A stretch of 64,000 nt of DNA from Haplodiscus bocki (Eukaryota). This document shows, piece by piece, positions 38,898 through 63,626 of this stretch. The first letter of the stretch is position 1. Every line of letters starts with the position of its first letter. The DNA lies in the NCBI GenBank assembly GCA_965655095.1, contig OZ296652.1:61442001-61506000 (forward strand), written 5' to 3'. The notes beneath the pieces were generated by a model. That model worked only from the letters and a program-made list of their open reading frames with translations. It did no database searches and was not told where the DNA came from. The position numbers and the translations under genes are program-made.

Positions 38898-39257
38898 GTC
38901 TGAATCTTCTTCCACTTGTCTGTTCAGTTTCGAAGCTTTATTAGTACCCTTGTAGAAAAGGGAAAACCAATCTATGAGAAAAGTCGAACTTTGTAAAAAT
39001 AGGTTCTTGAGATTTGAGGTTCAGACGAATTTAATTCAGTTGTTTCTGAGCAAAAAACTGCAATATTGGTTTAAAAAATCCGTTTGTGATATGCGACGGA
39101 AATAAAACAAGACCACCAGCATATTTTTCGCCCAACTACAAATATTTTGATCAACTTTTGCTAACGGTTAAAAACAAAACAACTGTTTTGATATTAGTTT
39201 TCAAAGAGTTTTTACAAACATCAATTCGACCACTGATTTCTGTACTTTATGCAAAAG

Positions 39258-40670
39258 GGTATCACGTTTTTCCGTTGAAAAATTTTTGTCTCACAATGCC
39301 GAAAAATTTCGTAGGTGAACCCTTCAGTGTTTCAGAAAATTTTTGGTATCGAAACATGTTAAGTATAAGAGAGGGGGCGGGTATCACGATTTTCCGTCAA
39401 AATTGTTTTGTCTCACAGTACTGAAACATTTCGTAGAGGAACCCTTCTTAGTTTCAAAAAATTTTTGGTATCGAAACATGTTAAGTATAAGAGAGGGGGC
39501 GGGTATCACGATTTTCCGTCAAAATTGTTTTGTCTCACAGTACCGAAACATTTCGTAGAGGAACCCTTCTTAGTTTCAGAAAATTTTTTGTATCGAAACA
39601 TGTTAAGTATAAGAGAGGGGGCGGGTATCACGATTTGGCGTCGAAATTGTTTTGTCTCACAGAGGCGAAAAGTTTCGTAGGAGGAACTCTTCTTTGTTTC
39701 AAAAAATTTTATGGATAAGAAGGTGGGGGGAGAAAGGAGTATCACAATTTTCCGTCAAAAGTTTTTTGTCTCACAGTGCCGAAAAATTTCGTAGGGGAAC
39801 CTTTGTCTTTCACTAACTTGGGGTATCGAAAAATTTTATGCAAAGGAAAGGGTATGTCACGATTTTCTGTCGAAAATTTTTTGTCTCACAGTACCGAAAC
39901 ATTTCGCAGAGGAACCCGTCTGAGTTTCAGAAAAATTCTGTTAGCGAAACTTCTCATGCATGAGAAGGGGCGGTATCACGATTTTCCGTCGAAATTTTGT
40001 CTCACAGTGGCGAAAAATTTCGTAGGTGAACCCTTTAGTGTATCATTAATTTCGGGTATCGAAAAATTCTATGCTTCAGAGGGTTATGTCACGATTTTCC
40101 GTCGAAAATTTTTTTGTCTCAGTACCGAAACATTTCGTAGAGGAACCCTTCTGTGCTGTGTTTCAGAAAATTTCTGGTAGCGAAAAAGTTTATGGATAAG
40201 AGGGAGGGGGAAGTATCAAGATTTCTTTCGAAAAATTTTTGTCTCACAGTGCCGAGAAATGCCGTAGGGGAACCCTTTAGGGTGTCACTGATTTCGGGTA
40301 TCGAAAAATTTTATGCTTAAGAGGGTTATGTCACGATTTTTTGTCGATTTTTTTTGTCTCGCAGTACCGAAAAACTTTGCAGGGGAACCCTGCTATGCTG
40401 TGTTTCAGAAAGTTCCCCGTAGCGAAAAAAATTATGGATAAGAATGGGAGGCGGGGAGTGTCAAGATTTTACGTCGAAAATTTCTTGTCTCACAGTGCCG
40501 AAAAGTTTCGTAGGGGAACCCCTCTGTGCTGTGTTTCAGAAAATTTCCGGTAGCCAAAAAGTTTATGGATAAGAGGGGGGGATATCAAGATTTTCCGTCG
40601 AAAGTTTTTTGTCTCACAGTTTCGAAAATTTTCGCAGGGGAACCCCTTAGTATTTCACTAATTTTGGGTG
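39258..40670. repeat. ~122-bp tandem repeat, ~12 copies, internal to the element
   Basis: GTATCACG at 39381, 39503 and 39625; recurring TTTGTCTCACAGT..CCGAAA..TTTCGTAG..GAACCC. Confidence 0.93.
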
Positions 40671-40702
40671 TTGAAGTGTTAGGGATAAATCGTAAAAATT
40701 TT

Positions 40703-40781
40703 TGGCAGGGCAGTGACTCGAACCCCGAACCTACTGCTTGAGAACCCTGTTGTCGTACGCCTATCGCTGTCATTTCTGTCA
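40703..40781 (-). other. tRNA-like relic (Pol III B-box)
   Basis: The minus strand reads GGTTCGAGTCACTGCCCTGCCA at the 3' end. The cloverleaf is degenerate, so this is not a functional tRNA. Confidence 0.45.
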
Positions 40782-40970
40782 TTTATTTTTGAATAAAAAG
40801 AGTTGGCAATTTTGGTCAGATAAAAAAAAGAAAAACGACCCTACTGAAAGAATAATTTTTCTTGTATATTTCATATACGGCGAAAAATAAACATGAAATT
40901 TTTCTTTCAAATCTCATCTATTGTTTTGTTTCATTTATTGAGTTAAGGAAATGTATGAAGTTATGTCTAG

Positions 40971-43750
40971 GTCATCTTCCTGTTTTGTTCTCAACGTCCA
41001 CGTTGTCTGTCGGAGTGAATTTGCCCGCCCATCTGGTTATTATCAAGTCAACAGATTGCTATCAAAATGGGGTATTAACCACTGCTCCAATATCCCAAAT
41101 TATTCAAATGATAGGCCGGGCTGGAAGACCTCAGTTTGATACTCAAGCTAAAGCCGTAATTATGGTCAAGAATCACGAGAAAGAACAAATCAGGAAAAGT
41201 CTACTGGGACAACAAACAATTGAAAGCTGTCTGCATTTGAACTTCCTGGAACATTTGAATTCTGAGATCAACATGAGAACTATCAATTGCCATGAATCGG
41301 CTCTGCGATGGATGAAGTCAACATTCTTGTATGTGAGACTGCTCGCAGAACCGCAAAACTATTGTCTCAAAATAGAACCTGGGTCTGCGTCTTCTGTGAA
41401 CCAGTTTTTGACTGATATCTTGGAGAAAAATTTTGTGGCGTTAGAACGTTTGCAACTTGTACGCAAAGTTCACAATGTTTGTAAAACTTCGGACCAGAGT
41501 GACTACGATTTAACTATCACCCCACTCGGTTCCATAATGGCTTTCAATAACATAAACTTCAAAACAATGGAGTCCTTCATGGGTGTTACAGCTGCCGAAT
41601 CAATCCACCAATTATTGCGAAGGGTGTGTAGTTCCGACAATGTTGATAGTGTGGTCTTGAGAGTCGAAGAGAAGAAACAGCTGAATTCTTTGAAAGATCG
41701 AATTCCGTACAAACTGAATATGACCAAAGTGAAAACAGCGGATGATAAAATATGTGTTCTGGTACATGCTACGTTGGTGTCTCTGGCTATTCCAGAGTTT
41801 ACATTCCAGCAAGATGTGAACCAGATTTTTCGATTGCTTCCCCGGCTTGGGTCGGCACTCGTACAAATTTTGGAGTACAAAAAGTTTTATATGAGCCTGA
41901 AAAACGCGTATTTATTGCGCCAAGCGTTCTGCACAAAACTGTGGCACAATTCTAAGTTCGTAAGCAAACTAATTCCAAAAATTGGGCAAAGTTCAGCGGA
42001 ATTACTTGTTAATGGTGGCTATAGTACCTTTCAGTCTATATTGGACTCGAATCCTCGGCATATAGAATTGGTGCTGAACAAGCACGCTCCTTTTGGAAAC
42101 AACATTGTGAACTTCGTCAAGCATATACCCAAAGTCAGCTTACAACTTTCCGAAACATGCTCAAACGAACGCAGTATAATCAATGTTACTTTAGCTTTGG
42201 ATAATTTCTCCGAAATCAACAAATCTTCTCAATCTTCTGCATGGCATAAATTCATAGTAATAATCGGCACGAGTAAAAATGAGCTGATCTTCTATGGAAA
42301 GGTAAGTGAGAGTTTACTCAAATCCAAAAGATCCTGGTCTCGTTCTTTTGCTGCGCCTCCGGAATCGTCTGTTTTCGCAAGTGCTATCAGCTCAACTTGG
42401 TGTGGAGTTGGAGACACTGCTTGTATCAAAAAGCAAGAATTCACGGACCTTGCGCATCTGAGCAACCCTTACGTATCACAGGTTATTACCGAAACTAACA
42501 AGAAAAATAGAAAATCTCAGAACACCAGTGCTGATAGCAGTGAAAACCCTCAGGCGTGCAAGCATGCTTGCAAAGATAAAAAGAATTGCGCTCATTCGTG
42601 CTGTAAAGTTGGAATAGTCTCTCAAGTGATGTCCTTGCCAAAATCTTTGAACTCCGTTTCGGAGAATAATCAAGAGTTTTCTGGTCATATGCTGGGTAGT
42701 GTGGAAACGTCTGCCGTTTCTGGAGAAACTGTTCCTGGTGATCACTTATTCAGGCGATCGAATAATTTAATTTCGGGTGAAAAAAATTCCGGAGTGACTC
42801 TGTTCCAAACTAATAGTACTGATGTCCCAGCCAAAAAGTTTTCCTTCAGAAGGAAAGAAGATCTTCGGGAGAATTATATGTCCAAACACGAAGCATTAAA
42901 CTTGGACTCTGTCTCAGATATACGTGATAAGATTGGAACCCCCAGTAAAAGACCTCCGACTTTAACAAATGAAAGCGCCCCATTTCCTAATGAAGTCAGA
43001 TCGCCTTCCAAAAAGTCTCGAGAGGAAATTGAAAAACAAAATCCATTATCTACTTGTCCGTATGATAGTGCTTTCTACTCAAGGTCAACTAGCGAGGCAG
43101 CCGAAAAATCTTGTTACTTTTCTGGAGACAAAACTGAACAGCTTGAATTCTTGGATGATGACGGAATAAGTTACAGTCCCCTAATAGAGCAAGATACAAC
43201 GGTAATTTATACCTTTCCCAGAAACCAAGACAACAGCCCAGACTGCATAAACTTGGATTTCGACGACAATGATGATGAGCTCTTGAGTTGTGTACTGGAT
43301 TCTTCACCAGATAATTATCGCGAGGCATCTAGTTCTTCAAAGGTTCCAGAACGTGCTCTTGTGGATTCAAACTCCTCCCTTGAATCAACTGTCGCTATCA
43401 AATCGAACATCAATCCGTTGCGAATTCTTTTTCCGAAATTGAAACCTGACGAAGCTATGGACGAAGTCAATGAAGAACTTGAAGGCCCTATCGAAGACCC
43501 AGATGAATTTCTCAGTCAATTTAAGTGGGTAAGGAGGAACCAAATTAACAAAACTTATAATACTTCTTCGAAAAGTAGTTTACGCAACGTGCTTGTCAGC
43601 AACTTGCTTACGGGAGAAAGGGACAGAATTGGCAGTCAATATCAACGAGAAAAGCTAACCGGTAGTCGCTCTTCAAAATTTTGGCGTATAACGAACGAGG
43701 AAGAACATATAATGCAAAGCAAGGAGAGATATTATGAGAACGATTCGTAA
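40971..43750 (+). CDS. HFM1: HFM1/MER3, coding exon 3 (helicase C-terminal, Sec63, zinc finger, low-complexity tail); spliced CDS 3867 bp = 1288 aa
   Basis: Acceptor CTAG at 40967-40970; STSTLSVGVNLPAHLVIIKST, QMIGRAGRPQFD, and the HFM1-type Zn finger CKHACKDKKNCAHSCCKVG. Confidence 0.93.
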
Positions 43751-44379
43751 GAAGATTAAATTGTATGAACCTGTTCGCAGAGATGCACAAATTTGCATTG
43801 ATGGTTTGGCACACACCCAAAAACTTTCATTAAGAGTCTCCTCTAATAACGTTGCTAGAATGAAGACGAAGCCGAAACGCTCAAGTCGGCGCTGCGAGCA
43901 AAGGTTCAAAAAATATCAGGGGTACCATAAAATTTGGGGGTAAAAACATACCGAAAAGCCCTAAAATGCGACGTTTTCTCGAATTTTTTTAAAGACTTGC
44001 TTAGTCTCAAACCAGTATCCATGTGTTTGAAAACTTTTGTTCATACTTTTAGTCTCAAACTTTCTAGACCACCAGGGCCCTCGAGAGCTCCATTCGGTTC
44101 AAGACGGGTCCACAAAATCTCACTAAAATTCTAGGACCTTCAAGAATGAGAAAACGAGTCACTGTTAGAGTCGACTTTTAAAGTAGAACGCTGACTAATA
44201 ATCACTTTCAAATTTTTCTGATTTTTATGGCAAATACGTTTACAAACTCCAAAAAATCTATAAAAAATACAAACTTCTAAAATACTTCAGCCACGGAAGA
44301 AACTTTTGTGGGTGCTTTTTAACCCTTCTCTGAGTAGATTTTCTATAACACGACATTGAAGACGCTATCATATGCAGAC

Positions 44380-44806
44380 CAGTGTATTGCATCGCTACTA
44401 AAAAATCGCTAATCACAATTACCGCTTTTCTGAGGACCGCTAATCTTAAATGCCGCTTTGAAAAACAAGCGGTTAGTGGCCGCTGATTTTTGGAAAAACT
44501 CGGAACTGAATTTTGCTGTTTTGCCGAACTTGGGGAGATAATATTTACTAGAGGGAAAGAGAAGTTCTGACGTCGCCATTTCATTATGTTTTTGGTTTTC
44601 AAGAAAAAAACAGGATGTTGTTGAAATCTGCCACCGATTTTCTTAGCTATTCCAGAAGTTTCATTCCCTATATCGAATGATACTATGAATTGTTTGTGGC
44701 ACAATCCAAATATCCGCTCAACGGCCGTTTTTTCGAATTTAGAGCAGCTAATTCGCTCACTTTCGCCTAACGAGCCTCTATGCGCTATTAGCGGTGCAAT
44801 GCACTG
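44380..44806. mobile_element. hAT-family MITE, 427 bp
   Basis: TIRs CAGTGTATTGCATCGCTACTA / TATTAGCGGTGCAATGCACTG; 8-bp TSD ATGCAGAC / ATGAAGAC (7/8); repeated subterminal CGCT motifs. Confidence 0.85.
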
Positions 44807-45902
44807 ATGAAGACAAAAAAATCCACTGTACTTGGATTTTCTGTTCACTTGAAGTTTCTCTGTCTGACCTACTTAGTTAGGTATTTGGCACGATTCTCAA
44901 ACAGATGTCCAAAACTACAGTGGTGTGATGAAATAAAATGACTAAGCTCAAAAAACTTCACTATGCTGATTCGCGGACTTGTGCTCAACTCCAAAAAACT
45001 TTGTAATTTCCTCAATATCTGTACAGAAGTGATAAAACGAGCCCATTAAGGCAATCGAAATACTTAATTTGAGAACTATTGGCTAATTAAGAAGAAAGCG
45101 CTAATATTAATGGTTTAGTTACTACAATTTCTATTGATTTTGCGCTTTTAACTTTAACTGTGATACAAAACACTTTTCGCTAGACTTGTCTCGTCAAAAA
45201 ATCTGAAGTCATTGATACAGTCCAGGCATTAAATAATGCGACTAGACATTAATAATACGTCGTCTTGAAGCACGATTAACTTCGCCATATACATTTTAGA
45301 TGAAAGTGGCGGAAACAAATGTTCTTGAGAAGTTTTAGAATGTAATGGTTTTTCTTCGGAAAATTTCCGACCACTAGAACAAAAACTGGAAAATACGTTT
45401 TTTGATCTTCTGAAATTTTCATAACGTCAAAAAAATTATTTTGGAGCTTTATCAAATCAATAGATGCCCCTGATTTTCTAGTTTTCTGCGGCAGCTGATA
45501 TCATTTCCAAAAAATATTCAAAGGGTTGTCGTTTCGTTGGTAAAATTAAACCATGTATTAAAATAGGTTGTCAAAATCATACCTACATTTCCCAAAACTT
45601 TCTGAAAAATAGTTTTGAGAAAAGTGGTAAAGATTTTAGAAAGTTTTGAGGAATAACCACAACTAACAAATTGCCAAATCCGTTTCCTACTATCTGGCGT
45701 AATGTTAATATATGTCACAAAAACTGCAAAAATTAGTCAAAACACCCGATGCTTAGTTTTTTCATCGATTTTCGGACGCTTTTTCCTACCTACCTGTTGA
45801 AAGTAATTCTTTTGGGAAATAAAATAACCATCTGAGACTTTTATACGCATTCTGACTGAAAGCAAGCATGTGCATGGGAAACTGGCTTTTTTATCCTGTA
45901 CA

Positions 45903-47073: not shown

Positions 47074-48350
47074 TTTTTCTAACTTCGATATTGACCGTAG
47101 AAGGTCCAAATAAAAACGATTGCTAACTTGATTAAATTCTAAGAAATTTTTAACAAGGGTCATATTTGGAAAATCTTAATAGCTTTGGTGATATTCGAAT
47201 TTGAAAATTGCCGATTGAAGTTTATGTTCATCTCCAATTTTAGAGACCGAGATCCAGAAATTGGCAAGGTTTACGCTAAGTCAATTAAATATTCCACAAC
47301 ACCGCTCTGGGTAACATAAATGATGGAACAGAAAATTTTGAAAGACTACTTTCAAGAGTTAGGCTTGCTTTTTATCGCGGACAAAAATCAGATATCCTCT
47401 GAAGATTTGCAGCTTAAATGTTTCAAATATTGCTATGGATAATAGGAAAAGTTGGCAGAAAAAAATATCAGTGTACGTATATGCTACGATGATTGAAACC
47501 GCTAAAATTTGAATCTCAGTGTAGTAATTTTTCATTAAACTGACCAGTGAAAAATTAGCGACTACCGATTGCTTTACCTCAGATGACGACGACAAAGTAA
47601 AGAAGGTTTTTGAAGAAAGTGAATATATGAAAATGTACAGTGAATATATGAACAATTCAACTTGACTCCTAATACCTAGAGTTCTTCGATTGAATGTGAT
47701 CCATTGAAACTTGTACGACAAAAATGTATTTGTTGAAAACGTTTTTCTGAGCACGCCTCGGCTCAATTAATTGTAAAACCGAGTGAAGCGAACGCTCCAT
47801 CGATAGATAAATGTCTACGCAATAGATATTCTACAAATACCTATGTAGTTTCAAATACCTCTAACATGTCAATAATGCTTTGTTCAGTTAAGAGGATAAG
47901 TGGACAGGTTTGGGTTGTGTCCTTTCGGTGGCCGCTTGTCAAACATTCATTATTTAACTGAAAAAGCCGCGACGTTTATACCGTATTCAGTAGTATCGTT
48001 TTGAAATATTTCCTTGTTGCACTTTTGTGAGTATCTTCTGGTGTAATACTTTCAAAGATTTATTTTGTGGTACTGTCAGGATGTTTTATCTTTGTTGCAT
48101 TGAGCGATGTCAAGATTATTGTTTGCTAACAGACTGGCAGTGACACTGGAAAAAGATGATTTCACGTTGTTTATTCTTCATAATTATGATAGCCCCAATC
48201 GACCTAGCGCTGTTTTGAAACAGCCAACCGATTTTCCAACTTCCTATTTAATTTTTCAGCAGCCCGTATCCATTAGAACGCTTCATTTTTAGCATTATGG
48301 TTTCATTTAGTAAAATTCGAACAGCATTAGGTGTGAAGCGACACTTTAAT

Positions 48351-48660
48351 GTCTGCCGTTGAAAAATGCGCTTTTTTCTTGTCAAAAATTTTCACATTTT
48401 ATGAAAGTTCACTTTAAGGCAAAAGACACTTTTCTCCAAAATACTTGCTGCAAATGAGACGGCACCCCTATATCATCGCACAATCGTGTCGTGTGCTTAA
48501 GAACCCAATAGTACCCCGTTGTTACTAAAAGTCCTGAAGTGTGAATCGCCACGAGGGTTCAGGAAAGAAAAACCAAAATTCGAAACAATGGGGGGGGCGC
48601 TGCGACAGGAGCTCACCAGATTAAAATGAAAGCTCAATATTAGAACTTTGAAACGCGCAG
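48351..48660 (+). repeat. Repeat segment A, copy 1
   Basis: Aligns with 60185-60470 (TCTGCCGTTGAAAAATG.., AATGAGA(C/T)GGCA.., ACCAGAT(T/C)AAAATGAAAG). Confidence 0.8.
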
Positions 48661-49267
48661 TTAATAATTTCCCAGAAATGTGTAATTGTGGAGAAATTCA
48701 ACTTATAATGTTTTTCTCTATTTCATCCAAATTCTGCAAAACTTTCTGGATTAATTGGAGTTAACATAGTTTCAGCGCGCGCGTTCGTTTCTCACCGGTA
48801 GGAATTCGTTTTGATTAGGATAGATTAATTCTAAGGTGACGTATCAACTGGCCGACGGATCTGTTAACCGATTGTTCAACGAGCCGATTTTAGCTTACTT
48901 CTGAAATATTATTGGCTAAGGTAGTGTGTTTCGGTTACGTAATAATTCTGAGCGATGAGCAGAAGTCAAATACACGCAACACAAGTTCGTTCAGTAGCAC
49001 ATTTGGTTCAATGAGTGGTCGGCTAATTGAACGACACCCTAATTCTTACGAACATAACGTTATTCTCGGCAGCATCCCAAAACAATTGCTATTCGTTGTT
49101 TTGCGTTGAAAAAATTTTTCGGAAGGAAAATTTTCAATTCAGAACTCAAGTTTTTTTTTCTTGAAACTGCCCTTTCCTGAAAAACTTTTTTTCCTGGAAC
49201 TGTCTTTGACGTGCAGAGTTATGCCCGCGCATATGGCAGAACCGTTGATGCCTTGAATAATACATAT

Positions 49268-49328
49268 GTGTGGGCGTTAACGCGGTTAGGATGCCAGAGG
49301 TGGCGAGTTTGGATCCTGCTGTCGGCCA
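49268..49328 (+). other. tRNA-like relic
   Basis: GGCGAGTTTGGATCCTGCTGTCGGCCA; homologous to 60657-60717. Confidence 0.4.
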
Positions 49329-49869
49329 TATTTTTTAGTTATTTTTAGATACTCGTTAACGCATTATTTTTTAGTACCAAAAAACAAGATATTTTCGACA
49401 GAAATTTGGGTTTTTTGATTAGTGGGCTTTTTTTCTCGAAAATTATCCTTCTTCTGACATAACTGAAGCAAGCCAGTGTTTCTCTGTATTTTCAAGAAAC
49501 GGGAATATATTTTCGGTTTTCCAAAGAAGCAGAAAAAAGTTGAAAGTTAAAAAATGTGCTGAAAAAAAATTAAAAATGTAAGTATTTGCTTTTTTTCAGT
49601 TTTTGGGTATTTTTTTCGCTACCCTAGTTTCTCCGGCTCAAGATAAATTTACTCCGAAAATATTTCTACCGGAACATGTTGTTCTGTGATCCCCAGATTG
49701 AGTGAAAACCAAAAAGCGCAATTAGTACTTAATTTCCTTCACGTTGCAACTCCTTTTTATCCGAGAATGCAGGGCTTTATTCTTTCATTAGGTCTCAAAC
49801 AGAAACCATGTAATTGTACAAGAGTATTCCAACGAAAAATCGGTGGTTTTGTGCGTTGCGTCATAACTC

Positions 49870-51730
49870 TGTTTGTCCGAAATTTCCGAAGTGTTCTATC
49901 ATTAGTGATACATCTCGTTATTCAAACTTTTTTCTCAGCAACTACTAGTTTGATTTCTTCCATCAAGATCTCAATCGAAAGCCTTATTATTGTAGGCGAG
50001 CATTCCAACAAAAAGTCATCGGCTACGAGCGTTGCATCAGAATCATAGGAAACCGAAAATTTGCTACAAACTAACAAAAAGTGGTACTAACAAGGTTTCG
50101 ACCCAATATTCGAAATCATGTTTCTCCATGACTACCACTTCCTTTTCCGTCATCTAGGTCTCAATAGAAAACTTTACACTTTCATGAATGCATTCGATCA
50201 CAACATCATTGATTTTGATCCTTGCCTCAAAATCCTTATAGTCCGAAAATTCCGAGAAGTGCTATTAGTATTGATTTACCTCGATATTCATACTCATTTT
50301 TCTCGGTAACTACAAGCTTGATTTCCTTCATCAAGGTCTCAACTGAACGTTCTACTCTTAGACAATGAGATTTGATTGAAAGTCCACTCAATTTGTTCTT
50401 TGCATCTAAATCCCGATAGTCCCAAAAATTGGAAGGTGTTAATTCTTATTGATTCATCTCGATATTCAAAACCATACTTCGCCGTAACGACAAGCTTCAT
50501 TTCTTCCATCAAGGTCTCAATCAAGCAATTTTTATTTAGGCAGGAGAACTCAATTGGGAAGTCATTTATTTTCTTTCTTTATTTGGAATTCTCATGAACC
50601 GAATATTCCGAAATGAGCCATTAGTTTTGGTTTATCAAGAGATACAAAATCATTTTCCTCCGTAACTACCTGCATAATTTCTTTCATCAAGGTCTCAATG
50701 GACAAGCTATTAGTTGCAGATGTATTCTAGTTTGGGAAACCATGGATTCGCTTACCTGTGGTAGAATTTTGATGGTTCGAGAAAGCCAAGGAACTGCTAT
50801 TAGTTTAGACGTTTTTCCGATATTCCAACTCATAGTTCTCCATAACCGCTGATTTGATTTGATTCAAGGTCTAAATCTAAAGCCTTCTCTCTCTGGTAGA
50901 CTACTCGAGTGAATGTTTCTCGATTTTGTTCTTTCTGTCGGAATTCGGATATCCCAGAATGCCAAAATGCTCTCACTATTTATAAATCTGTAAACTTCAA
51001 TCTTATTTCTCCATAACCACAGGCTTGATTTATTCGACTAAGCTCGAATTCGAAATGCTTCGATTTTTTGAGGAGTATTGTGTTTAAAAACTATCAATGC
51101 CGTTCCTGCCTCGGAAGCCGGAAAAGCTTATAATTTGGACTCATCTGGATTTTCAATGTCGTTTTTCTCCAAATATACTGACAGTTTTTTCTTCAAGCTC
51201 TCAACCTAAAGTTTTCCGTTTTTGCTGGAATATGCATTTAGGAATTAAGAATTTTTGTCCATTCAGTGGAATCCTAAAGGACCAGAAATCCCAAAAAATG
51301 CTCTTAATCTTGACCTGCTATGTTCAATCTCATGTCTTTTAGCCCTACCTGCTTCTTTTTTCCGTCAAAATGTCAATTGATGGCTTTTTAGTTGAGGTAG
51401 ACTATTCAATTGTGGATTTTAAAGAATTTGTCTTCTACGTCAGAGTTGGAATTCCGATTTACCAGTTTTTGGCAAAATGCTACTAGTATTGAGATCTCGA
51501 TTTTCGAACTTGTCCTTCTCGAAAACTACATGTTTGAAATTTCTATCAAGGTCTGAATTGACGGTGATAATTTTTCAAAAGTTTATCAGATGAAATAATC
51601 AATGATTTTGTCCTCTACAATGGAATATTGATAGGCTTAACATGAAAAAAGTTCCAAGTAATGTTCATATTTCATCGATTTTCAGACTCATAAATATTGA
51701 TTCTTCCGCCGAGGTCTCTATCGAGATGTT
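49870..51730. repeat. Diverged ~175-bp tandem array, ~10 copies
   Basis: TTGATTTC..CATCAAG(G/A)TCTCAAT recurs near 49950, 50320, 50495, 50675, 50855, 51540 and 51710. Confidence 0.8.
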
Positions 51731-54719
51731 CTTTTGTCAGTATTGGGTTATTTGTTATTGTGATTTGCTGTATGTTCGCACAATTTTCGTATGAGCCACC
51801 TTGACGTAAAATATCGCTGTGCGACTGCACGTCTTGTTTATGATTCCGCTGTGTAAGGATTATGAAGTCAACATGTCTACTTACGAGAGTTCAAGAGAAT
51901 TCTCTTTCCTTCATAATTTCAGTGATAACAAGAAAAATCGATTTGAAGCCTATTTCGTCATACCATTCCAGTGTTGACTCTCTTCACCCCAATCTAGAGC
52001 CAGCGAACTAAAAAATGCAAGAAGCAGAATCAGGTTAATAAAATTTAAGAGATTTTTCATTTTATTTTCTTATACTCAATACATATTTGAAATAATAATG
52101 CAAAAAGTTTTGAAGCCATTTTTATCAACGAGATAAATGACTTTAGAAAATAACTTAGCGAAAATTCATTCTGGCGTATTCATTTTGAAGAGTGTCCTGA
52201 GAATACCCTTGTTATGAAAGCCAACTTAATTGCAATGATTATCAAAAATGGATATATTAGGGTGGTCTTCACTGGGAAGATTTCTTTGTTCCTTCTCACC
52301 TCTTTGCTGCAGTTTCCAGTAATTCCGTTTCCAAGAACTCTTCCGTGACTGGAAGGAAAGTTTCTGTGCTGTCTCGAAAAAAAGTATTGGTTTAACTGAC
52401 GCGAAATTGAATTTCAGCCAATCACAGAACAGTTCGCCTCCATGTGGTAGAGGGAGTTAAAATACTCGTCAATATGGGTGGTGAGTAGAATATATAACTC
52501 CGGATTGTCAACCAGTCAGATTTTGGTCCACTGGAGACTATTTACATTCTGATTTAGTTTCAAAAAACAAAACTAGAAAAATAAAAATTCAAAAAAAATC
52601 ACCATTCGTCAAACTGCGGCGCGATTTTTTTAATTCAATTTGGTTGAGGAACCCTTGTCTTTGAATAACTATTGAGCTATGAAGCTATGGGAGGATAATG
52701 ACCAATTTTACAGTTCTTAAAAAAGCAGAATCGCTGCTGTGAAAGTACAAATGGAACGGAATCGCCATCGGCTTGTACTTACTGTACCCTGGTTGAAAGA
52801 GTGTGTCGGCAGGTTAATTTTTTTTCTCAAAACTAATCAAAATCTTCTTCAAGCATGTGTCCGAACGAATTTGGTTTCTTACATTTCAATTCAATAAAAG
52901 TTGGAGATCGATGAAGATCCTAAATCGAGGCTATGATCAGAAAAATTAATGGCGAGTGAATGCGACTTGAATCTGATTGGCTCTTGATGTACTCGGAAGT
53001 TATCTCTCTCGGAATGAATTGCAATACTTTTGCTATCTCAACTTTCGAAAAATTTCATCATAGATTTAACAACAGGCCGTGTTGACTTTTGCTTTGGATA
53101 ATTGCGTTTGGAATAATTTTACGAAAAAGTTTTGTTCGTTGGAGTTAAACGTTTGAATCCTCGTTAAAGGATATCGTACAGGTTTTAGTTTTTAATGGCA
53201 ATTGTGGGTAGACCCGGTTCGATTCGTGTTCCATTAAAGTCAAGCAAATTTATGTCTTCAGCTTGCAATCCGGAACTTGTAGTACCAATGTGGTCTGCAA
53301 TATCTTTCCCAACTCAAATCAATATTTTAGAGCATGAGAGCACGCAACGATGGTAGTGCATTAACTTTATGGGCCTTTACGACAGAGCTAAAATAGCAAA
53401 TAACACGCGGATCGTATACTGACTACGATATCTGACTTTTTATAGCATCACAGACTGTTTTGTTTTTCTTAGAAACATGCATTTGTGTGCTTTGGACGAG
53501 TTCCCAACTTGACATCCGAAGCAATTTTGCAAAGGACCCGACGTCAAGCAATAGAAATAAAACTGAAGCATTGTCCTTTGTAATTGCAGGAGAATGTATC
53601 CTCATCAGGGTTAATGAATTGCAAAAACTCTCATTTTAATTTTGTCGAAATTAAGTAATTTCTTCAGTTGTATTGGTCAATGAGATGTCTGCCGTTTAAT
53701 GCTTTCATTCTGATCACAGTTTATTGACTTTAAATACGCAGTTTACTTCGAATCTGAGACTACGCACCTTGTTTTTGGCTGCAAGATATTCATTTTTGGC
53801 GCGTCGGTGGCCGCCTAAAATTTTTTTTCCTGCTTTGAATTTCTGCCATGAAATATGCGTGATTTTTGGTCCGCTCTAAAACGCGTCACAGCGTGAGTTA
53901 ACGAAATTTAGCGTTAAAAACAACGAAAAAGGAAAACCACGATCATTTTTTTTACTAATTTTGGCTCTTTTTTCATTATCAACTGCCTAAATAAACCAAG
54001 CCCCCAAAGTGTATTTTGTAAGCAGAGAACATTGGCTGCTCGCAAAAAAAAGTTGTGACAGACAGTTTCCATCAATTTTGTCTAAGACAAGTCAATTTTT
54101 TTTGAAAAATTGCGTGAAATTTCGTAAAATTTAGCGTCATATTCATTGCGAAATTTGAAAAAAAGCGTGATTTTTTAGTATGCCTGATTTAAATTAATAC
54201 TTTGCCCTGAGAAATACAAGTCTCTTATGATTACGTAATAGGTCACAGGTTGTGCCATTTGTCATTTTCCTGGAACGATTTTCATGATGAATTTAAGATA
54301 GCGAAAATTGATGAAAACTTTTGGTGGTGATTTACTGATTCGCTGATTCGATATACGTCAAGCTTGGTGTGAATGGCACTTTGTCAAAGGAAGCCAAGTC
54401 TGATGGTATACACGTACTGACGTAACCATGAAATTGATACGAAAATCATTGATGCAGCCATCAACTTTTTCAAATCAACAGTGCTGGAAGTAATGCGTAT
54501 CAGAAAGTTGAAGCCAGCTTTAAAATTGTCCGGGGAGCTGTAGCTACGGAAATTTTCTCCCTTGTATTTGCTTTTGATACTTTCATGTTCAGCTTCCAAA
54601 TCAGGAATGGATATGAAGCTGAAACTCTTGAATCATTCCAATTACAACTCCAATTTGCTTTTGGTCGGTGCTTTATGAAATAAAGATGCCACCTATTGCC
54701 GTTGTTTTTAAGGCAACAG

Positions 54720-55101
54720 ACGTTACTTCGAATCAATCCAATTTTAGAGTTTAATGACAGAATGTAGTAGGATATCTCCGTGGCGTAGTGAGAAAGATAA
54801 AAAGGGTTCCAAATCCACAGGTACCAGGTTCGAGCCCCAGTATAGGCTATATTTTTGTACATTTTATACCAAAAAATATACAAAAACTTAAACTTCGCTC
54901 CAAAATTTTTTCGTGGTACCCCCTCATAAAAATTTAATGAATCGACAGGAAGCGAGTGCGAATCCCAGCATAAGCTACGTTTTCGTATGTTTTATACCAA
55001 AAAATGTACGAGAAAATGTACCATTTTGTTCACTTATCAAAGTCCTATGAATATTTTGAGCCATGCGGGCGGCACCGTTTTTGGCCGTTCCCGGCTTGTT
55101 A
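54720..55101 (+). mobile_element. Short interspersed element with a tRNA-like part and a DINE-like 3' end
   Basis: Ends GGGCGGCACCG..GGCCGTTCCCGGCTTGTTA. The 5' boundary is approximate. Confidence 0.5.
54774..54849 (+). other. tRNA-like relic with A- and B-box
   Basis: TGGCGTAGTGAG (A-box-like, 54781) and GGTTCGAGCCC (B-box, ~54827); stems are imperfect. Confidence 0.5.
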
Positions 55102-58021: not shown

Positions 58022-58099
58022 GTGAGACTAATGAAATTCTTGGTTTATTGCTGAAAACTGTTGACTCAACACTTTTCGGCATATGATATTGTTTTCAAG

Positions 58100-58274
58100 C
58101 AAGAAGGATTGGATCCCACGAAACCCGGTGACTTGAAAGAAGCTTTTAATGTGACGTCATTAAATTCTGGATCTCTTGAAAAGTGGCCAAATGAAGAGTT
58201 TCGGAAAGTTACGTCTGGTCTTTTCCAAAAAATGACCAAAATTGCACAGCGAGTACTGAGAATTATTGCATTAG
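58100..58274 (+). CDS. 2OG-Fe(II) oxygenase, exon 2
   Basis: Acceptor AAG at 58097-58099 (78-bp intron); QEGLDPTKPGDLKEAFNV..KWP..; donor GTGAGA at 58275 (phase 1). Confidence 0.88.
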
Positions 58275-59391
58275 GTGAGAATTTCATTATCCATTCCTCA
58301 ATATAATAGCCAACCGAAGTTCGGTAAAGAACATGAAAAATTGGTTCTTTTTCCTATTCTAAAAAGAGACAAATGCAGCTTATGTTCATGATTGCGAATT
58401 TCAGTAGAAAACTTACAGCCCAATTTTGAGCACCTGAAGACTGGTAATGGTTCAAAGTCGAAATGAATTAATCTTAAAGTGGTCATTGTGTCATATCTGC
58501 CACATATTGTTTTTTTTTCAGTTTTTATGTGGTATTTTCTAACTGGAAAAAACATAGTGGAGGTCCATATTACTGTGTCGCAAGCTGATATGTTTCCAGC
58601 TATTGCAAATTTGAAGTACAATAGTGTTTTCGAAGAATGGAGCTCAAGAGCGTTCACTGGTGCTATTTAGCCAATAAGATCTCGTCATTTGCTCTCAATT
58701 TGCTATCTCATCGGGGAGTATTTGCCAACTTTGGTAATCTCTACCATTTTTTTGAAATTTGATTTAGAAAAAACTTTTTCGGAAAATTTTGTTACCAGAA
58801 AAAATTTGGTCACAAAAATTCCCCAGAAGTTCATGAATTCATGCATATATTTTGATTTTAAAATATTTTGAAATAGCAAAGATTTCGCAAATTTTCAAAA
58901 AAATAAATCTTAAAACCTATTCAAAATATGTAATTTCGAAGCTCATTGTACACATACAGCAATTTTATGAGCAATTTAAAACAGTTTTGAAACCAAAAGT
59001 TTTATTGGTTTCAAGATATTTAGAGGACACTTGCGTACATTATGCTTCCTAAAAGTTTTTCATTGTGGCTTTTATATATCAAAAATACACGAAACTTATT
59101 TAAAGTTGACCAAAATTGACAATTTCTAACTCTTGCTCTGTTGGTCGCACAGTTTTCAAACAAAACCGATTGTTAACTAGATTAAAATCTAAGAAACTTT
59201 TCTTTCTACCAAAACCCAGCATTTCCAATACTTTCAGCGATATTGATGTCCAAAGATGGTCAATTTTTCATGGGAGCGCCATTCTTCTGAAACACTACTG
59301 TATTTGAGCTGTGCTGTCACCTAGGTGTTGCTTTGCGACAATTCTGAGCTGAGTGGAAATGTATGAAGTTTGTGACAATTGCCCAAATCCT

Positions 59392-59951
59392 TTATTATTT
59401 TGCGCTATATTGAAAATATGGAAAGCAAAATCTTCCTCTCAAATAGGTGCGTTTTTTAACCCGATGTTTGCCAATTGAGCTCGCGTTAAAAACGATGTTG
59501 GCTCGCGTCGTGAAAATTTTTGCCAAGATATAACCAAAAAAGACAGAATGGCCAAAGTCGCCAGAATGGCCAAAAATGCCGAGATTGTCAAGATTGCCAG
59601 GATTGCAGAAATTGACGGGACTAAATTAGAGATTTTTTTTGAAACGTTCGAAATTTGAGTATTTTTGGAATAGATGAGTTTTTCGGAAAAAGCTTGAATT
59701 GTATTGAATCTCTAACCGTGGCAAATTTGTTGTAGAATGCGTATCAAATGGTTTTTTTCTCAAAAATGTTTTCCGCCCTAATTCTGAGGTTTTTTGGCGA
59801 AAAAAAATCAGGAAACTTTGAACGTTGGAAAAATTAGAAAGTATGATGCAGTGTGATTTTTCGAGAAAAAAAAACGTTTCATCTTTTCAAAAACCTTCTT
59901 GACAAAAATGGGGAGGCGCAAAATATGCCGGTGGTAGCCGGCCGTCTTGAT
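59392..59951 (+). mobile_element. Helentron/DINE-like element, ~560 bp, with a 9-bp microsatellite
   Basis: Subterminal IR TATTTTGCGC (59396-59405)/GCGCAAAATA (59916-59925); palindrome GCCGG-TGGTAG-CCGGC; end CTTGAT; (GATTGCCAA)-like 9-mers at 59545-59620. Confidence 0.72.
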
Positions 59952-60184
59952 AACTTATTTCTGATCATCTTTTCCAAAGTAACTTATTTCATCTGCTTTA
60001 TATGCTAGCCACAACCCTGATGTGTTAACCCTAATTTACCCAACGGTTCTTCAAAGCAGCCAACCGTATTTCCACCTGCCCAATCAGTTTTCCACAAGCT
60101 CATTTTCATTAGCACGCTACATTTTGACTTTGTTTTCATTTTCTCCAACTCCAATAGCTTTAGATTTTGATGCGGCACTTCAAT

Positions 60185-60470
60185 CTCTGCCGTTGAAAAA
60201 TGTGCTTTTTTGTCAAAAAATTCAGTTTTCTTGAAAATTCACGTTATTTTAAAGTAATTTTTCTCCAAAATGCTTGCCGAAAATGAGATGGCAACCCTAA
60301 ATCATCACACACTCATGCTAAGTGTGAGAGAACGCAATAGTATGTTGTTATGCAATCGCCACAAGGGGCGAATGGCCGCGAAGAAGTAGTACCAGAGGAG
60401 GACGCTCGTGGCGATAGGATCTTACCAGATCAAAATGAAAGTTCAATAATACGCTTTTCAAATGAGCTGT
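60185..60470 (+). repeat. Repeat segment A, copy 2
   Basis: Partner of 48351-48660. Confidence 0.8.
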
Positions 60471-60656
60471 AAATTGTTTCTCAATTCACAATAGAGAAGA
60501 TTGAGCGGATGTTTTTTTCTCATTTTTATTTTCCGTCGAAAAAAATTCGGAAGGAAAATATTCAATTCAGTAGTTGGAGTTTTTCTCCTTTTCTTGATTT
60601 TGCCCATGACGCCCAGAATTGTCTGCAAAATTTTTGGTGGCTCGCATATAACATAT

Positions 60657-60717
60657 GTCGAGTGGCACGGCGCTTAGGTCGCCCACAGGTAGTGAGTTCG
60701 AATCCCGCTGTCCGCCA
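60657..60717 (+). other. tRNA-like relic
   Basis: GTGGCACGGCG...GTGAGTTCGAATCCCGCTGTCCGCCA: canonical B-box/T-loop and a tRNA-like 3' end. Confidence 0.55.
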
Positions 60718-61259
60718 TATTTTTTTTGAAAATTTTTTAGATACTCGTTAACATTTTCATTTTTAAGGAGCAAAAAACAAAGTTTTTTCAACTAAGTTCA
60801 TGTCCTACGATGAGCGGGATTTTTTTTCTGAACAAGTATCCGTTCTCTGACGTGAAAGAAACAAATTGTTCTGTTCCTTTCTTCGAAAAAGTAGGATTAA
60901 GTTTTCAAATTTCCTGCGAAGCCAAAACTTTTTTAATGAATCTGCTTAGAAAAATTACGTAGAAAAATGGAAAATGGAACTTTTTTAAGCTTTTGAGTAT
61001 CAGTTTTTTCCTTGTCCCAGTTTCACAGCAGTCACAAAAAAACAAATTCACTGCCAAAATATTTCTACTGGAACACATCGTTCTGTGTTCTCCACATTGA
61101 GGGAATGCCAAAAAGTGCAATTTGTTGAACCTCCTTGATGTTGCAACTCACTTTTTTCCAAAATTTAAGGCTCAATTCTTTCGTCTTGGTTTTATTGGGA
61201 AGCTTTTTTTGTACAAAAGTATTTCATTGACAGTCTTTTGTTGTGATTGTCGCGTTAGA

Positions 61260-63370
61260 ATCTTGACGGACTGGTGATCCGAAAAGTAGTGCCATTAGTT
61301 TCCGAAAATCTCGTTTTTCAAACTTTTATCTCGCCATAACCACTGCCTTGATTTCTTCCACCAAGATCTCAATCGAAAGCTTCATACTTGTAGAGGAGAA
61401 TTCTATTTAAAAAGCATTTTTTTTTAGATTTTTGCCTCAAAATCCATATGGTGCTAAAATTCCAAACCGGATAGTCCGAAAATTCCCAAAAATGCTCTCA
61501 ATGTTGATTAGTCTCGCTGTTCCAACTCATATTTTTCCGTAGCTACAGGCTTGATTTCTCTCATCAAGGTCTCAATCTGAAACTTTCAATTCGTGGCTGA
61601 CCATTCCATTGAAAAGTTGCCGATTTTGTTCCTTGCATCAGAAAACTGATAGACCAAATACTCCGAAAACTGTTATTAAGATTGATTTATCTTGATATTT
61701 ACGCTCTTTTCCCTTGATACTGGCTTGATTTTTTCCATCGAGCTCTGAGTTGAGACCCTTGAACTAGTGACAGGCCAATACATGGAAAAATTATTGATTT
61801 AGTTCCCAGCATCAGGATCCTGATAGTCCGAAGTTTCCACAATATGCTAGTGATTTTCTTTCATCTCCGTGATCAAACTCATATTTTTCCGTAACTACAA
61901 GACTGATTTCCTATATCAAAGTCACGATCGAAAGCTTTAAACTTGTGCAAGTGTATTCATTTCAAAAATCTTTTCTTTGCCTCGGAAGTCTGGTAGTCGA
62001 AATATGCCAAATTTGCTAATGATTTTCTTTCGTCTCTAGTGGAACTCATTTTTCCTCGTACTCACAGGGTTGATTTCTTTCAACGTAACAACTAGCTTGA
62101 TTTCATGTATCAAAGTGACGATCGAAAGCTTCAAACATGTGCAAGAGTATTCATTTCAAAAATCAATCTTTTTTCTATGCCTCGGAATTCTGATGGTCAA
62201 ATTATGCCAAATTTGCTAATGATTTTGATTCGTCTCCATAGTCGAACTCGTTTTTCCTCGTACTCACAGGCTTGATTTCTTTCAACGTAACAACTAGCTT
62301 GATTTCATATATCAAGGTTATGATCGAAAGCTCTAAACTTGTGCAAGGATATTCATTTCAAAAATCTTTTCTCCATGCCTCGGAATTCTGGTAGTCGAAA
62401 TATGCCAAATTTGCTAATGATTTTGATTCGTCTCTAGTCGAACTCATGTTTTCCTCATACTGGCAGGCTTGATTTCTTTGAACAGGATCTATAACGTGTT
62501 TTCCTTGAAGAGGAGATTCCATTTCGGAGTCAATTGTTTTGTTACTCGGATCAGAATTCTGATAGTCGGAAGATTCCAAATTGGGTCATTAAAATTGATT
62601 CATCACGAGATGAATTTTTTTCTCCGTAACTACCAGATTATGTCATTTCTTCAAGTTCTCAATGGACAGTAATGTACGTGTAAAGGAGTTTTGGTTTTAA
62701 AAGGCATTGATTTTGTTACTTGCTTTGAATTTTGATATTTCAAGAATGCCAAAGATGTGCTATTCCTTTCGAAATTTTCTCCATATTCCAATTCATAGTT
62801 CTCCTTAAAAAGCTTGACTTCTTGGTTCAAAGTCTCAGTCTGCAGATTTCTGTTTTTGTTGGTTTTCTTTTCGGTTCTGAAAGTTTTGATTTTGTATTAT
62901 GAGTCAGAAACTCGATAGTCCGAGATCGCCCTAATATGCTCCTAATAATGATATTTTTCTGAGTTGAAACTCGTATTTCTCCAAAACTATTAGCTCGATT
63001 AATTTCTACAAGGTAGCAACTAAAACTAGTTTTTGTCGTAGAGAATTTATAGGTTTAAAAAGTCATTGATTTTGTTTCTTGCGTTGGAATTTTGATGGAT
63101 CAAAAATGACAAAGAACTTCTATTAATATTAAGATTTTTTCGATATTCCAATTCATAGTTTTCGATGAATATTGAATTGATTTCTTGCTTCAAGGTCTCA
63201 ATCTAAAATTTTCTGTTCTGAATGGACTAATCGATTTCAAAATGATTGATCTTGTCGCTTGCGTCGGAATCCTGATAGTCCGAGAATGCCAAAATGCTAA
63301 TAGCATCGATAAATCTTTTTTCAAACTCATCATTCTCGAAAGCTACCGGCTTGAGACGTATTTTCCGTGG
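61260..63370. repeat. Diverged ~175-bp tandem array, ~12 copies, with a younger ~200-bp triplication at ~61890-62480
   Basis: Recurring GCTTGATTTC..TCAAGGTCTCAAT and GATAGTCCGA; GTAACAACTAGCTTGATTTCAT at ~62085 and ~62287. Confidence 0.82.
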
Positions 63371-63626
63371 AGATTTTTTTTATCATTTATGGGTTTCTTC
63401 GTAAAAATGATTTCTATGTTCGGTCAGTCTTTTTGCGCCCCATTGACGGAAAATATCGCAGTACGCCTGCGCCTCTTGTTTAGGTTTTTACGAAAAAAAT
63501 GGTCGATGGAGGGTTAAGTCGAAATGGTGAAGTTGAAGAAATGAATATGCTGTGCTTTCAGTCGAAATGCCTAATTTTTACTTAATTAGGGCTCCGTTAT
63601 TGTAGTGTTGGATATTTGCTTTGCAG

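What the first reader, a model, noticed from the sequence alone, without database searches (positions are those of the whole stretch)
39104..63482. Chimeric mobile-element design: Helentron-type ends + tRNA-like head + internal satellite
Seen in three elements of two families (39104-40892 minus; 49096-51839; 60523-63482). The architecture is a 5' subterminal IR/stem-loop, then a tRNA-like sequence with B-box 100-170 bp inside, then a 122- or 175-bp tandem array, then a 3' subterminal IR, usually a GC hairpin, and CTTGTT. A fourth element (54720-55101) also pairs a tRNA relic with a CTTGTT end. Knowledge: subTIRs, a 3' palindrome and central repeats typify DINE-1/HINE elements, while tRNA heads typify SINEs. 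Inference: rolling-circle elements here recurrently carry a Pol III/TFIIIC site, which could transcribe the satellite, act as an insulator or open the origin.
Basis: partly seen in the sequence, partly recalled or inferred. Interest (0 to 1): 0.7.

Follow-up and report, generated by a model that had tools for sequence, protein, structure and literature searches.

The report
Rolling-circle hitchhiker elements with tRNA relic
These are gene-less passengers of Helentron-type rolling-circle transposons, a known kind that carries satellite repeats, and their one unusual feature is a decayed tRNA-gene fragment that several families share by descent or exchange and for which no function is shown.

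Summary
The architecture is real. Family A (39106-40890, minus) and family B (49096-51838; 60526-63480) have sharp ends shared by thousands of candidate copies. Each has TT, a 5' subterminal inverted repeat nested in a hairpin, a tandem array of 122 or about 178-202 bp, a 3' inverted repeat, a GC hairpin and CTTGTT. No target-site duplication was found. This is the published HINE/DINE-1 (non-autonomous Helentron) design.

The "tRNA-like head" is only a relic. It has a T-arm/B-box, an acceptor-like 3' strand and an oligo-T at the position of a tRNA-gene terminator. ARAGORN finds no tRNA. Rfam's tRNA model gives nothing at E<=10.

The relic cassette is homologous in A, B and the fourth element (family D, really about 54655-55101). 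It was therefore inherited or exchanged, not recurrently invented. The oligo-T would stop Pol III before the satellite. The youngest family (A) carries a damaged B-box. A fifth HINE-like element in the window has no relic.

The junction CTTG-TT-5'end occurs 549 times in the genome against 9 for the control. Long Rep open frames exist in the genome, but their termini could not be fetched.

The scan noted the same idea earlier on other DNA of this genome (s1-382638). No RNA data were available.

The parts
39106..40890 (-). Family A element: a non-autonomous Helentron-type (HINE) copy that lies next to a helicase exon
   Evidence: The 5' end is sharply shared by 30 other copies. The 3' region is 98-99% like other copies up to 39114, where this copy has lost the hairpin.
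40855..40888 (-). A: 5' subterminal inverted repeat (ATTTTTCGCC) nested in a hairpin with its partner GAAAAAT
   Evidence: DNA fold z -2.75, with 1 of 200 shuffles folding as well.
40690..40770 (-). A: tRNA relic (B-box-like GGTTCGAGTCA at 40724-40714, acceptor-like strand, oligo-T)
   Evidence: The B-box has 1 mismatch in 31 of 33 copies, sits about 157 nt from the 5' end and has a T-run at +26. It is not a tRNA by ARAGORN.
39257..40645 (-). A: 122-bp satellite, 11.5 units (242-bp higher order)
   Evidence: TRF and the repeat finder D3/D7. Each unit holds TTGACGGAAAAT.
39106..39132 (-). A: 3' subterminal repeat GGCGAAAAAT and CTTGTT terminus (hairpin deleted in this copy)
   Evidence: The loose-end consensus at 39114 shows the hairpin in other copies.
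49096..51838 (+). Family B element (copy 2, more decayed)
   Evidence: 5' and 3' motifs.
49243..49336 (+). B copy 2: decayed tRNA relic and oligo-T
   Evidence: Aligned with the other B copies; the repeat finder D16.
49800..51700 (+). B copy 2: diverged tandem units of about 178 bp
   Evidence: the repeat finder D1, D2, D5.
60526..63480 (+). Family B element (copy 3)
   Evidence: Genome matches begin at about 60522-60530 and end at about 63481; ends.
60527..60560 (+). B: 5' subterminal repeat ATTTTCCGTCG nested in a hairpin with GGAAAAT
   Evidence: DNA fold z -3.21, with 1 of 200 shuffles folding as well.
60634..60726 (+). B: tRNA relic (T arm with B-box-like motif at 60695-60705, acceptor-like strand, T8)
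   Evidence: 88% identical to the family consensus, whose T arm is a perfect 17-mer. No Rfam tRNA hit at E<=10.
61200..63350 (+). B: tandem units of about 176-203 bp, including a younger 202-bp unit in 3 copies at 61890-62483
63445..63480 (+). B: 3' subterminal repeat GACGGAAAAT, GC hairpin and CTTGTT
54655..55101 (+). Family D element: its 5' module is unrelated to B's, and its relic is embedded in a 128-bp tandem unit (second partial relic at 54943-54993)
   Evidence: Genome matches span query positions 92-105 to 541-542. Alignment with the L055 copy. nhmmer with the B profile gives E 2e-7 and 1e-3.
54781..54856 (+). D: A-box-like TGGCGTAGTGA (54781-54791), exact B-box (54827-54837) and oligo-T (from about 54852)
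   Evidence: The A-to-B offset is 46 nt, as in tRNAs. The L055 copy has a perfect A-box.
30627..31604 (-). Family C HINE-like element without a relic (5' end tentative)
   Evidence: The 3' end has GGGCGGAAAAT, a GC hairpin and CTTGTT. There is a microsatellite and no B-box-like motif.

Best explanation
The elements are non-autonomous Helentron-type rolling-circle transposons (HINE/DINE-1-like).

Mechanism, inferred from the family: a Rep-helicase made by autonomous elements elsewhere in the genome recognises the 5' module (TT, subterminal repeat, nested hairpin) and the 3' module (complementary subterminal repeat, GC hairpin, CTTG). It nicks at ...TT(D)^TT-like sites, peels off one strand and inserts it at a TT in T-rich DNA without duplicating the target. 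Insertion often falls directly behind another CTTG. The central arrays are the satellite-like cargo usual for this group and vary in unit number between copies.

The tRNA-like stretch is a decayed tRNA gene fragment with a T arm, the 3' acceptor strand and the gene's own oligo-T terminator. Family D also keeps an A-box at tRNA spacing. The fragment entered an ancestral internal module once, or a few times from one source. It has since been carried along passively and exchanged between families.
For: Shown here:
- Ends are sharp and shared genome-wide, with thousands of first-look candidates.
- The subterminal repeats are complementary within each family although they differ between families: ATTTTTCGCC/GGCGAAAAAT in A and ATTTTCCGTC/GACGGAAAAT in B.
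- The 5' hairpins fold with z -3.2 and -2.75. The 3' GC hairpins have different sequences in A, B, C and other families.
- There is no target duplication: 3.2 nt mean against 3.08 for shuffled flank pairs, p 0.28.
- The flank logo is TT-N before the element and T-rich after it.
- One paralogous uninterrupted site was found.
- The junction CTTG-TT-5'end occurs 549 times against 9 for the control.
- No ORF of 150 aa or more lies inside the elements.
- The genome holds at least 147 Helitron_like_N matches, many in open frames of 2300-2780 aa.

Relic:
- The B consensus has a perfect 17-nt T arm followed by TGTCGGCCA and T9.
- The T-run sits at +25/26 in A, B and D.
- One D copy (L055) has a perfect A-box and a 10/11 B-box at tRNA spacing.
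- The cassette is homologous in A, B and D.

Passive carriage:
- The whole 340-bp 5' module of B is evenly conserved.
- The young A family has a duplicated T loop and a mismatched B-box.
- Family C lacks the relic.

The published definitions match (PMC4067079; PMC7492417).
Against: - No autonomous element with the same termini was shown. None of the junction-motif matches listed on contig C1 lies in a Rep array.
- The single empty site is a paralogue of only about 70% identity, so the exact cut within the T run is unresolved.
- tRNA origin rests on about 35-45 nt of resemblance, and no covariance model or cloverleaf search supports it.
- The cassette keeps a similar offset from the 5' end (157-175 nt) even in family D, whose terminal module is unrelated. 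Pure passive carriage does not predict that.
Confidence: 0.75

Rival explanations
1. The tRNA-derived cassette is a working Pol III/TFIIIC unit that the elements keep because it helps them. It might do so through a bound B-box that keeps chromatin open near the 5' end, acts as a boundary, or yields a short RNA.
For: The ancestral B sequence had an exact B-box, a perfect T arm and a terminator. A D copy has perfect A-box geometry. The cassette is shared by three families, one with an unrelated terminal module, at a similar 157-175 nt offset. Between A and B, the detectable similarity is concentrated in the terminal block and in the relic plus downstream block.
Against: No RNA runs exist for this organism in the index, so nothing shows transcription. 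The oligo-T directly after the relic excludes satellite transcription from it. The A-to-B box gap in B is only 21 nt. The youngest and most uniform family (A) has a mismatched B-box and no A-box. Conservation in B is no higher over the relic than beside it. Family C has none.
Confidence: 0.12
2. The relics are independent insertions of one abundant tRNA-derived SINE, or independent captures of similar tRNA genes, into each family. This is true recurrence.
For: D's first 130 nt are unrelated to B's (z -0.8) while the relic part is homologous (z 5.5). The nhmmer match of the B profile to A is not significant on its own (E 0.16).
Against: The A and B 5' modules are collinear and homologous along their length (z 6.7; z 4.0 without the terminal block). 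In 364 kb of held sequence, the relic hits lie behind a B-type 5' end or in D copies. The two exceptions are one diverged B copy and one hit at a locus edge, so no free-standing SINE copy was seen. The relic ends in a gene-type terminator, not a SINE body.
Confidence: 0.1
3. The resemblance to tRNA is a coincidence. The GC-rich hairpin with a GGTTCGA loop would then be a structural part of the 5' module, for example a protein-binding hairpin.
For: No tRNA model or cloverleaf finder recognises any copy or consensus. Folding energies of the segments are not unusual (z -0.8 to -1.2).
Against: The exact B-box motif is expected 0.14 times in the whole window. Even so, the consensus carries it inside a perfect 5-bp stem with the canonical 7-nt loop. 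An acceptor-length strand and an oligo-T follow at the tRNA-gene position in three families. A perfect A-box lies at tRNA spacing in one D copy.
Confidence: 0.05

Closest known systems
HINE / DINE-1 non-autonomous Helentrons (Thomas et al. 2014, PMC4067079)
   Same: They are non-coding. The subterminal inverted repeat begins 2 nt from the 5' end, and an inverted partner forms a 5' hairpin. The 3' subterminal repeat lies upstream of a short palindrome that ends 8-9 nt from the terminus. They carry central tandem repeats and have runs of T at the boundaries. They insert at TT in T-rich DNA without duplication.
   Different: They carry a decayed tRNA-gene fragment in the 5' internal module, and the 3' terminus is CTTG(TT). 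The autonomous partner was not identified here.
Cg_HINE elements of the Pacific oyster (PMC7492417)
   Same: Each element combines flanking modules with satellite-like central repeats of 120-200 bp. Related flanks occur with unrelated repeats and the reverse. Elements often sit inside other repeats. The partner Helentron was not linked there either.
   Different: No tRNA-like segment is reported there ('tRNA' does not occur in the text). In the oyster the left flank carries a microsatellite rather than a relic.
IS91-family rolling-circle insertion sequences (PMC13181058)
   Same: There is no target duplication. A tetranucleotide target, 5'-CTTG, abuts the end where replication starts, and a similar tetranucleotide marks the far end. 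Here elements end in CTTG and 549 copies start right after CTTG-TT.
   Different: IS91 elements are bacterial and encode their own transposase. Homology of the enzyme was not examined here. The parallel is one of mechanism only.
Canonical Helitrons (5' TC ... CTRR 3', inserted between A and T)
   Same: A 3' hairpin lies close to the terminus, there is no duplication, and host sequence is captured.
   Different: The ends are TT-ATTTT ... CTTG-TT, and the target is TT rather than AT. Subterminal inverted repeats are present.
tRNA-derived SINEs
   Same: A B-box and, in D, an A-box lie at tRNA spacing.
   Different: The boxes lie 150-210 nt inside the element and an oligo-T follows at once. There is no LINE-type tail, no duplications and no 5' truncation.
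tRNA-Cys cluster overlapping annotated Helitrons in Arabidopsis (PMC10701932)
   Same: tRNA genes are repeated within Helitron-annotated units. The authors discuss capture of a non-coding RNA gene by a rolling-circle element.
   Different: There the tRNA genes are intact and local, and the Helitron prediction tools did not confirm the elements. Here the fragment is decayed and is dispersed in thousands of copies.

Membership tests
HINE / non-autonomous Helentron | No coding capacity | tested here: met
   No ORF of 150 aa or more lies inside any of the elements.
HINE / non-autonomous Helentron | Subterminal inverted repeats of about 11-15 bp. The 5' one lies 2-4 nt from the end and the 3' one lies upstream of the palindrome. 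| tested here: met
   10-12 nt cores are complementary within A and within B although they differ between the families. The 5' core starts after TT. The 3' core starts about 36-37 nt from the end.
HINE / non-autonomous Helentron | Short palindrome (stem-loop) near the 3' terminus | tested here: met
   GC stems of 5-6 bp end 8-9 nt from the terminus in A, B, C and other families, with different sequences. Single-copy fold z is only -0.6 to -1.5.
HINE / non-autonomous Helentron | Inverted partner of the 5' subterminal repeat (DINE-1 and Cg_HINE type hairpin) | tested here: met
   z -3.21 (B copy 3) and -2.75 (A). B copy 2 is decayed, z -1.3.
HINE / non-autonomous Helentron | Central tandem repeats or microsatellite | tested here: met
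   A copies range from 586 to 1768 bp through unit number.
HINE / non-autonomous Helentron | Insertion at TT in T-rich DNA without target-site duplication | tested here: met
   No duplication signal. TT is present at both junctions in more than 90% of A copies. One TT is shared in 549 head-to-tail junctions. One paralogous empty site was found at about 70% identity. The exact cut is unresolved.
HINE / non-autonomous Helentron | An autonomous Helentron in the same genome sharing the termini | not testable with these tools
   Rep (PF14214) matches with open frames of up to 2780 aa exist. No Rep fragment lies in the held loci.
Canonical Helitron | 5' TC and 3' CTRR termini, with insertion between A and T | tested here: not met
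   The ends are TT-ATTTT and CTTG-TT, and the flanks are T-rich.
tRNA gene or pseudogene | Cloverleaf recognised by a covariance model or ARAGORN | tested here: not met
   Only a 13-nt T arm appears, at E 2.7-9.
tRNA-derived SINE | Internal A and B boxes at the 5' end of the element, a LINE-type or A-rich tail, variable duplications and 5' truncation | tested here: not met
   The boxes lie 150-210 nt inside the element. The 3' end is a hairpin followed by CTTGTT. There are no duplications. The 5' ends are uniform.

The most novel reading that the evidence does not exclude
A tRNA-gene-derived cassette (B-box, T arm, terminator) is kept about 157-175 nt from the 5' end in three Helentron-passenger families, one of which has an unrelated terminal module. 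The reason would be that TFIIIC or Pol III binding there helps rolling-circle mobilisation or protects the element. This would be a DNA transposon that has domesticated a Pol III control element.
Probability: 0.1. Interest if true: 0.7.

Novelty: new variant of a known kind. Interest (0 to 1): 0.38.

Why it matters
Helentron passengers are a main route by which satellite DNA spreads through animal genomes. This genome adds families that also spread thousands of B-box-bearing tRNA relics. That matters for annotation, because these relics should not be called SINEs or tRNA pseudogenes. It could also seed TFIIIC sites genome-wide. The 549 CTTG-TT-5'end junctions give a testable clue to where the Rep enzyme cuts, and they parallel the CTTG target of bacterial IS91. 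Capture of a non-coding RNA gene by rolling-circle elements is hardly documented. My literature searches found no report of it for Helentrons. PMC10701932 calls such a capture a potential first.

Tried and rejected
- Rfam and ARAGORN on the window, on three short stretches, on the best-kept locus copy and on the consensus sequences gave no tRNA.
- RNA folding of the relic segments was not unusual.
- A search for RNA runs found none. Laying DNA contigs gave repeat depth and the hairpin consensus but no read that skips the whole element, so no empty site came from reads.
- Joined-flank searches within the held 364 kb gave one paralogous empty site only.
- Pfam on the longest ORFs of the loci found a retroviral-type integrase but no Rep.
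- Comparing coordinates of element hits with Rep hits found no adjacency.
- A protein-atlas look-up to learn the taxon only confirmed a Sec63-domain helicase next to element A.
- Canonical Helitron, SINE and intact-tRNA readings were rejected (see the membership tests).
- Consensus sequences were built only for the non-coding 5' modules of these transposon passengers. None was built for the virus-like array in the first 28 kb.


Full report
**Setting.** The window is AT-rich (33% G+C). It comes from a 1.5-Gb eukaryotic assembly with at least 12 large chromosomes. Words of the repeat described here also occur in coral-reef metagenome runs. The organism itself is coded.

The ORF at 40862-43750 is an exon of a Sec63-domain, Mer3/HFM1-like helicase. 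Element A sits just upstream of it on the other strand. The first 28 kb of the window are a separate macro-tandem array and are not part of this finding.

**Observation.** Three elements with the described layout exist.

Family A (39106-40890, minus strand):
- It begins TT-ATTTTTCGCC at a position shared by 30 other copies, beyond which the flanks are unrelated.
- In 23 other copies it ends GGGCGAAAAAT-ATGCCGGTGCTAGCCGGCCGT-CTTGTT.
- The window's copy has lost the hairpin. The loose-end consensus of reads at 39114 shows this too.
- Copies are 89-99% alike. Their length runs from 586 to 1768 bp because the number of 122-bp units varies.

Family B (49096-51838 and 60526-63480):
- It begins TT-ATTTTCCGTCGAAAA and ends TGACGGAAAAT-ATCGCAGTGCGACTGCG-CCTCTTGTT.
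- Copies are about 70% alike.
- The interior holds about ten diverged units of 176-203 bp.
- First-look candidate counts run from 1400 to 4500 per query. The summed word depth over A is 10^5-10^6, against 20-50 in the flanks.

**What kind of element.** The anatomy matches the published definition of Helentron-associated non-autonomous elements (HINE, DINE-1; PMC4067079; Cg_HINE, PMC7492417).
- A subterminal inverted repeat starts two bases from the 5' end.
- Its inverted partner 20-30 nt downstream makes a hairpin (z -3.2 and -2.75).
- A complementary 3' copy lies upstream of a short GC palindrome.
- Central satellite-like repeats fill the interior, and T runs mark both boundaries.
- The repeat cores differ between A (TCGCC/GGCGA) and B (CCGTC/GACGG) but stay complementary within each family. 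The hairpins of A, B, C and further families in the loci differ in sequence but not in form. This pattern argues for function.
- Flank pairs show no target duplication (3.2 nt against 3.08 for shuffled pairs, p 0.28).
- The flank logo is TT-N before the TT-ATTTT start and T-rich after CTTGTT.
- One A copy (L062) lies inside another repeat whose uninterrupted paralogues (L076:520-687; window 45022-45180) run straight across the site. At about 70% identity they cannot place the cut within the T run.
- Canonical Helitron termini (TC...CTRR, AT target) are not met. SINE behaviour (tail, duplications, truncation) is absent.

**A new quantitative point.** The 16-mer that joins a 3' CTTG, a single TT and a 5' subterminal repeat (CTTGTTATTTTYCGYC) occurs 549 times in the genome, against 9 for the reversed control.
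- In the loci, 3 of 23 A copies start directly behind CTTG, one of them behind a B-type 3' end.
- Only one TT lies between the two elements, so that TT is shared.
- Either the site behind CTTG is a favoured target, or head-to-tail multimers are made directly.
- Both fit a rolling-circle enzyme whose target cut resembles its own 3'-end cut. Both recall IS91, whose target is 5'-CTTG next to the origin end and which makes no duplication (PMC13181058).
- Four copies also carry tandemly duplicated 5' termini (L017, L072, L082, L083).

**The tRNA-like segment.** It is a relic, not a tRNA.

Evidence against a tRNA:
- ARAGORN finds nothing in the window, in 300 kb of loci or in the family consensuses.
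- Rfam lists no tRNA at E<=1 on the window, or at E<=10 on 126-261-nt stretches around elements 3 and 4 and the well-kept copy L024. There only the 13-nt T arm registers, at E 2.7-9.
- Folding is unremarkable.

Evidence that the resemblance is not chance:
- The B consensus carries GCGGG-TTCGAAT-CCCGC. This is a perfect T arm around an exact B-box, a motif expected 0.14 times in the whole window. TGTCGGCCA and T9 follow it.
- In A, B and D the oligo-T starts 25-26 nt after the B-box start, where a tRNA gene's terminator lies.
- A D-family copy (L055) has a perfect A-box (TGGCCTAGTGG) 46 nt upstream of a 10/11 B-box, which is tRNA geometry.
- The segment is present in every sampled copy with an intact 5' end. 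The B-box is exact in only 5 of 29 B copies and in none of 33 A copies.

**One cassette, not recurrent invention.**
- The 5' modules of A and B align along their whole length (z 6.7, 0 of 500 shuffles). Without the terminal block z is 4.0. The relic part alone gives z 2.8.
- The B profile finds the relic of the fourth element at E 2e-7, and its second, partial copy at E 1e-3.
- The fourth element belongs to a family D that spans about 54655-55101, not 54720-55101.
- D's relic and downstream stretch are homologous to B (z 5.5) and to A (z 6.0). Its first 130 nt are unrelated to B (z -0.8). The cassette therefore occurs behind two different terminal modules, as expected if HINE modules recombine. 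The oyster study describes such reshuffling for flanks and repeats.
- In D the relic is part of the 128-bp tandem unit.
- In 364 kb of held sequence, the relic hits lie behind a B-type 5' end or in D copies, apart from one diverged B copy and one hit at a locus edge.
- A fifth HINE-like element in the window (family C, 30627-31604, minus strand) has the same style of 3' end but no relic.

**Function.** Nothing shows that the relic works.
- In B the A-box-like and B-box motifs are only 21 nt apart.
- Column conservation across 31 B copies is as high beside the relic as within it.
- The youngest family (A) has a duplicated T loop and a B-box mismatch at the position of the conserved C61.
- No RNA run of this organism is indexed.
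- One fact is left unexplained by passive carriage: the cassette sits 157-175 nt from the 5' end in all three families.

**Autonomous partner.**
- The genome has at least 147 Helitron_like_N matches, many inside open frames of 2300-2780 aa spaced 15-17 kb apart.
Shared termini are therefore untested.
- None of the junction-motif matches listed on C1 falls in a Rep array.

**Caveat on independence.** The 540 bp upstream of element 3 are about 72% identical to a stretch 355 bp upstream of element 2, while the downstream flanks are unrelated. The two B copies may descend from one duplicated locus or from a copy that carried 5' flank along. The family-level conclusions rest on the other loci.

**Comparison and verdict.** This is a HINE, a known kind, with an unusual cargo.
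- Searches of the held literature found no Helentron, HINE or DINE-1 report of a tRNA-like segment. A 2023 paper calls Helitron capture of a non-coding RNA gene a potential first (PMC10701932).
- The same idea was noted earlier by this scan on other DNA of this genome (s1-382638). My tests agree with its follow-up.
- I rate the finding a new variant of a known kind, of modest interest. The functional reading remains possible but unlikely.

Noticed in passing
genome-wide (G000); example L078:1465-1520: The junction CTTG-TT-ATTTTYCGYC joins one element's 3' end, a single shared TT and the next element's 5' repeat. It occurs 549 times against 9 for the reversed control. The matches include a third abundant 5' type, ATTTTCCGCC, which fits family C's 3' repeat.
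   Followed up: partly
window 1-28024: Large tandem array with 2195-bp units (1-9141, 99% alike) and about 3.87-kb units (6942-28024, 95-97.5% alike). It was left alone as virus-like.
   Followed up: no
window 30627-31604 (minus): HINE-like element (family C) with a GGGCGGAAAAT 3' repeat, a GC hairpin, CTTGTT and an (AAAAATTAC)n microsatellite, but no tRNA relic. The 5' end is tentative.
   Followed up: partly
window 59990-60525 and 48160-48740: The upstream flanks of the two B copies are about 72% alike. The stretch lies 355 bp further from the element at copy 2. The downstream flanks are unrelated. This could be an old local duplication or carry-along of 5' flank.
   Followed up: partly
L017, L072, L082, L083 (5' ends near position 1500): Tandemly duplicated 5' termini (40-77 nt) lie in front of full elements.
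   Followed up: no
window 39257-40645: Every 122-bp unit of the A satellite contains TTGACGGAAAAT, the core of the B-type 3' subterminal repeat. The unit's start resembles the block that follows the relic in B (ACAT-TTTTT-GATAC-CG).
   Followed up: partly
window 37445-38347 and 40985-43750 (+): There are two long open frames. The second encodes a Sec63-domain Mer3/HFM1-like helicase. Element A lies between the two frames on the opposite strand.
   Followed up: partly
window 1085 and 3280 (+): A B-box-like GGTTCGCGTCC with a T-run at +25 occurs in each 2195-bp unit of the macro-array. It may be another tRNA relic or chance.
   Followed up: no
window 38188-38384: A short stretch with about 100-fold higher word depth than its flanks in the DNA runs. 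It is an unrelated small repeat.
   Followed up: no
L069:1-1329: An open frame with integrase core and zinc-binding domains (retroelement) lies next to an A copy.
   Followed up: no
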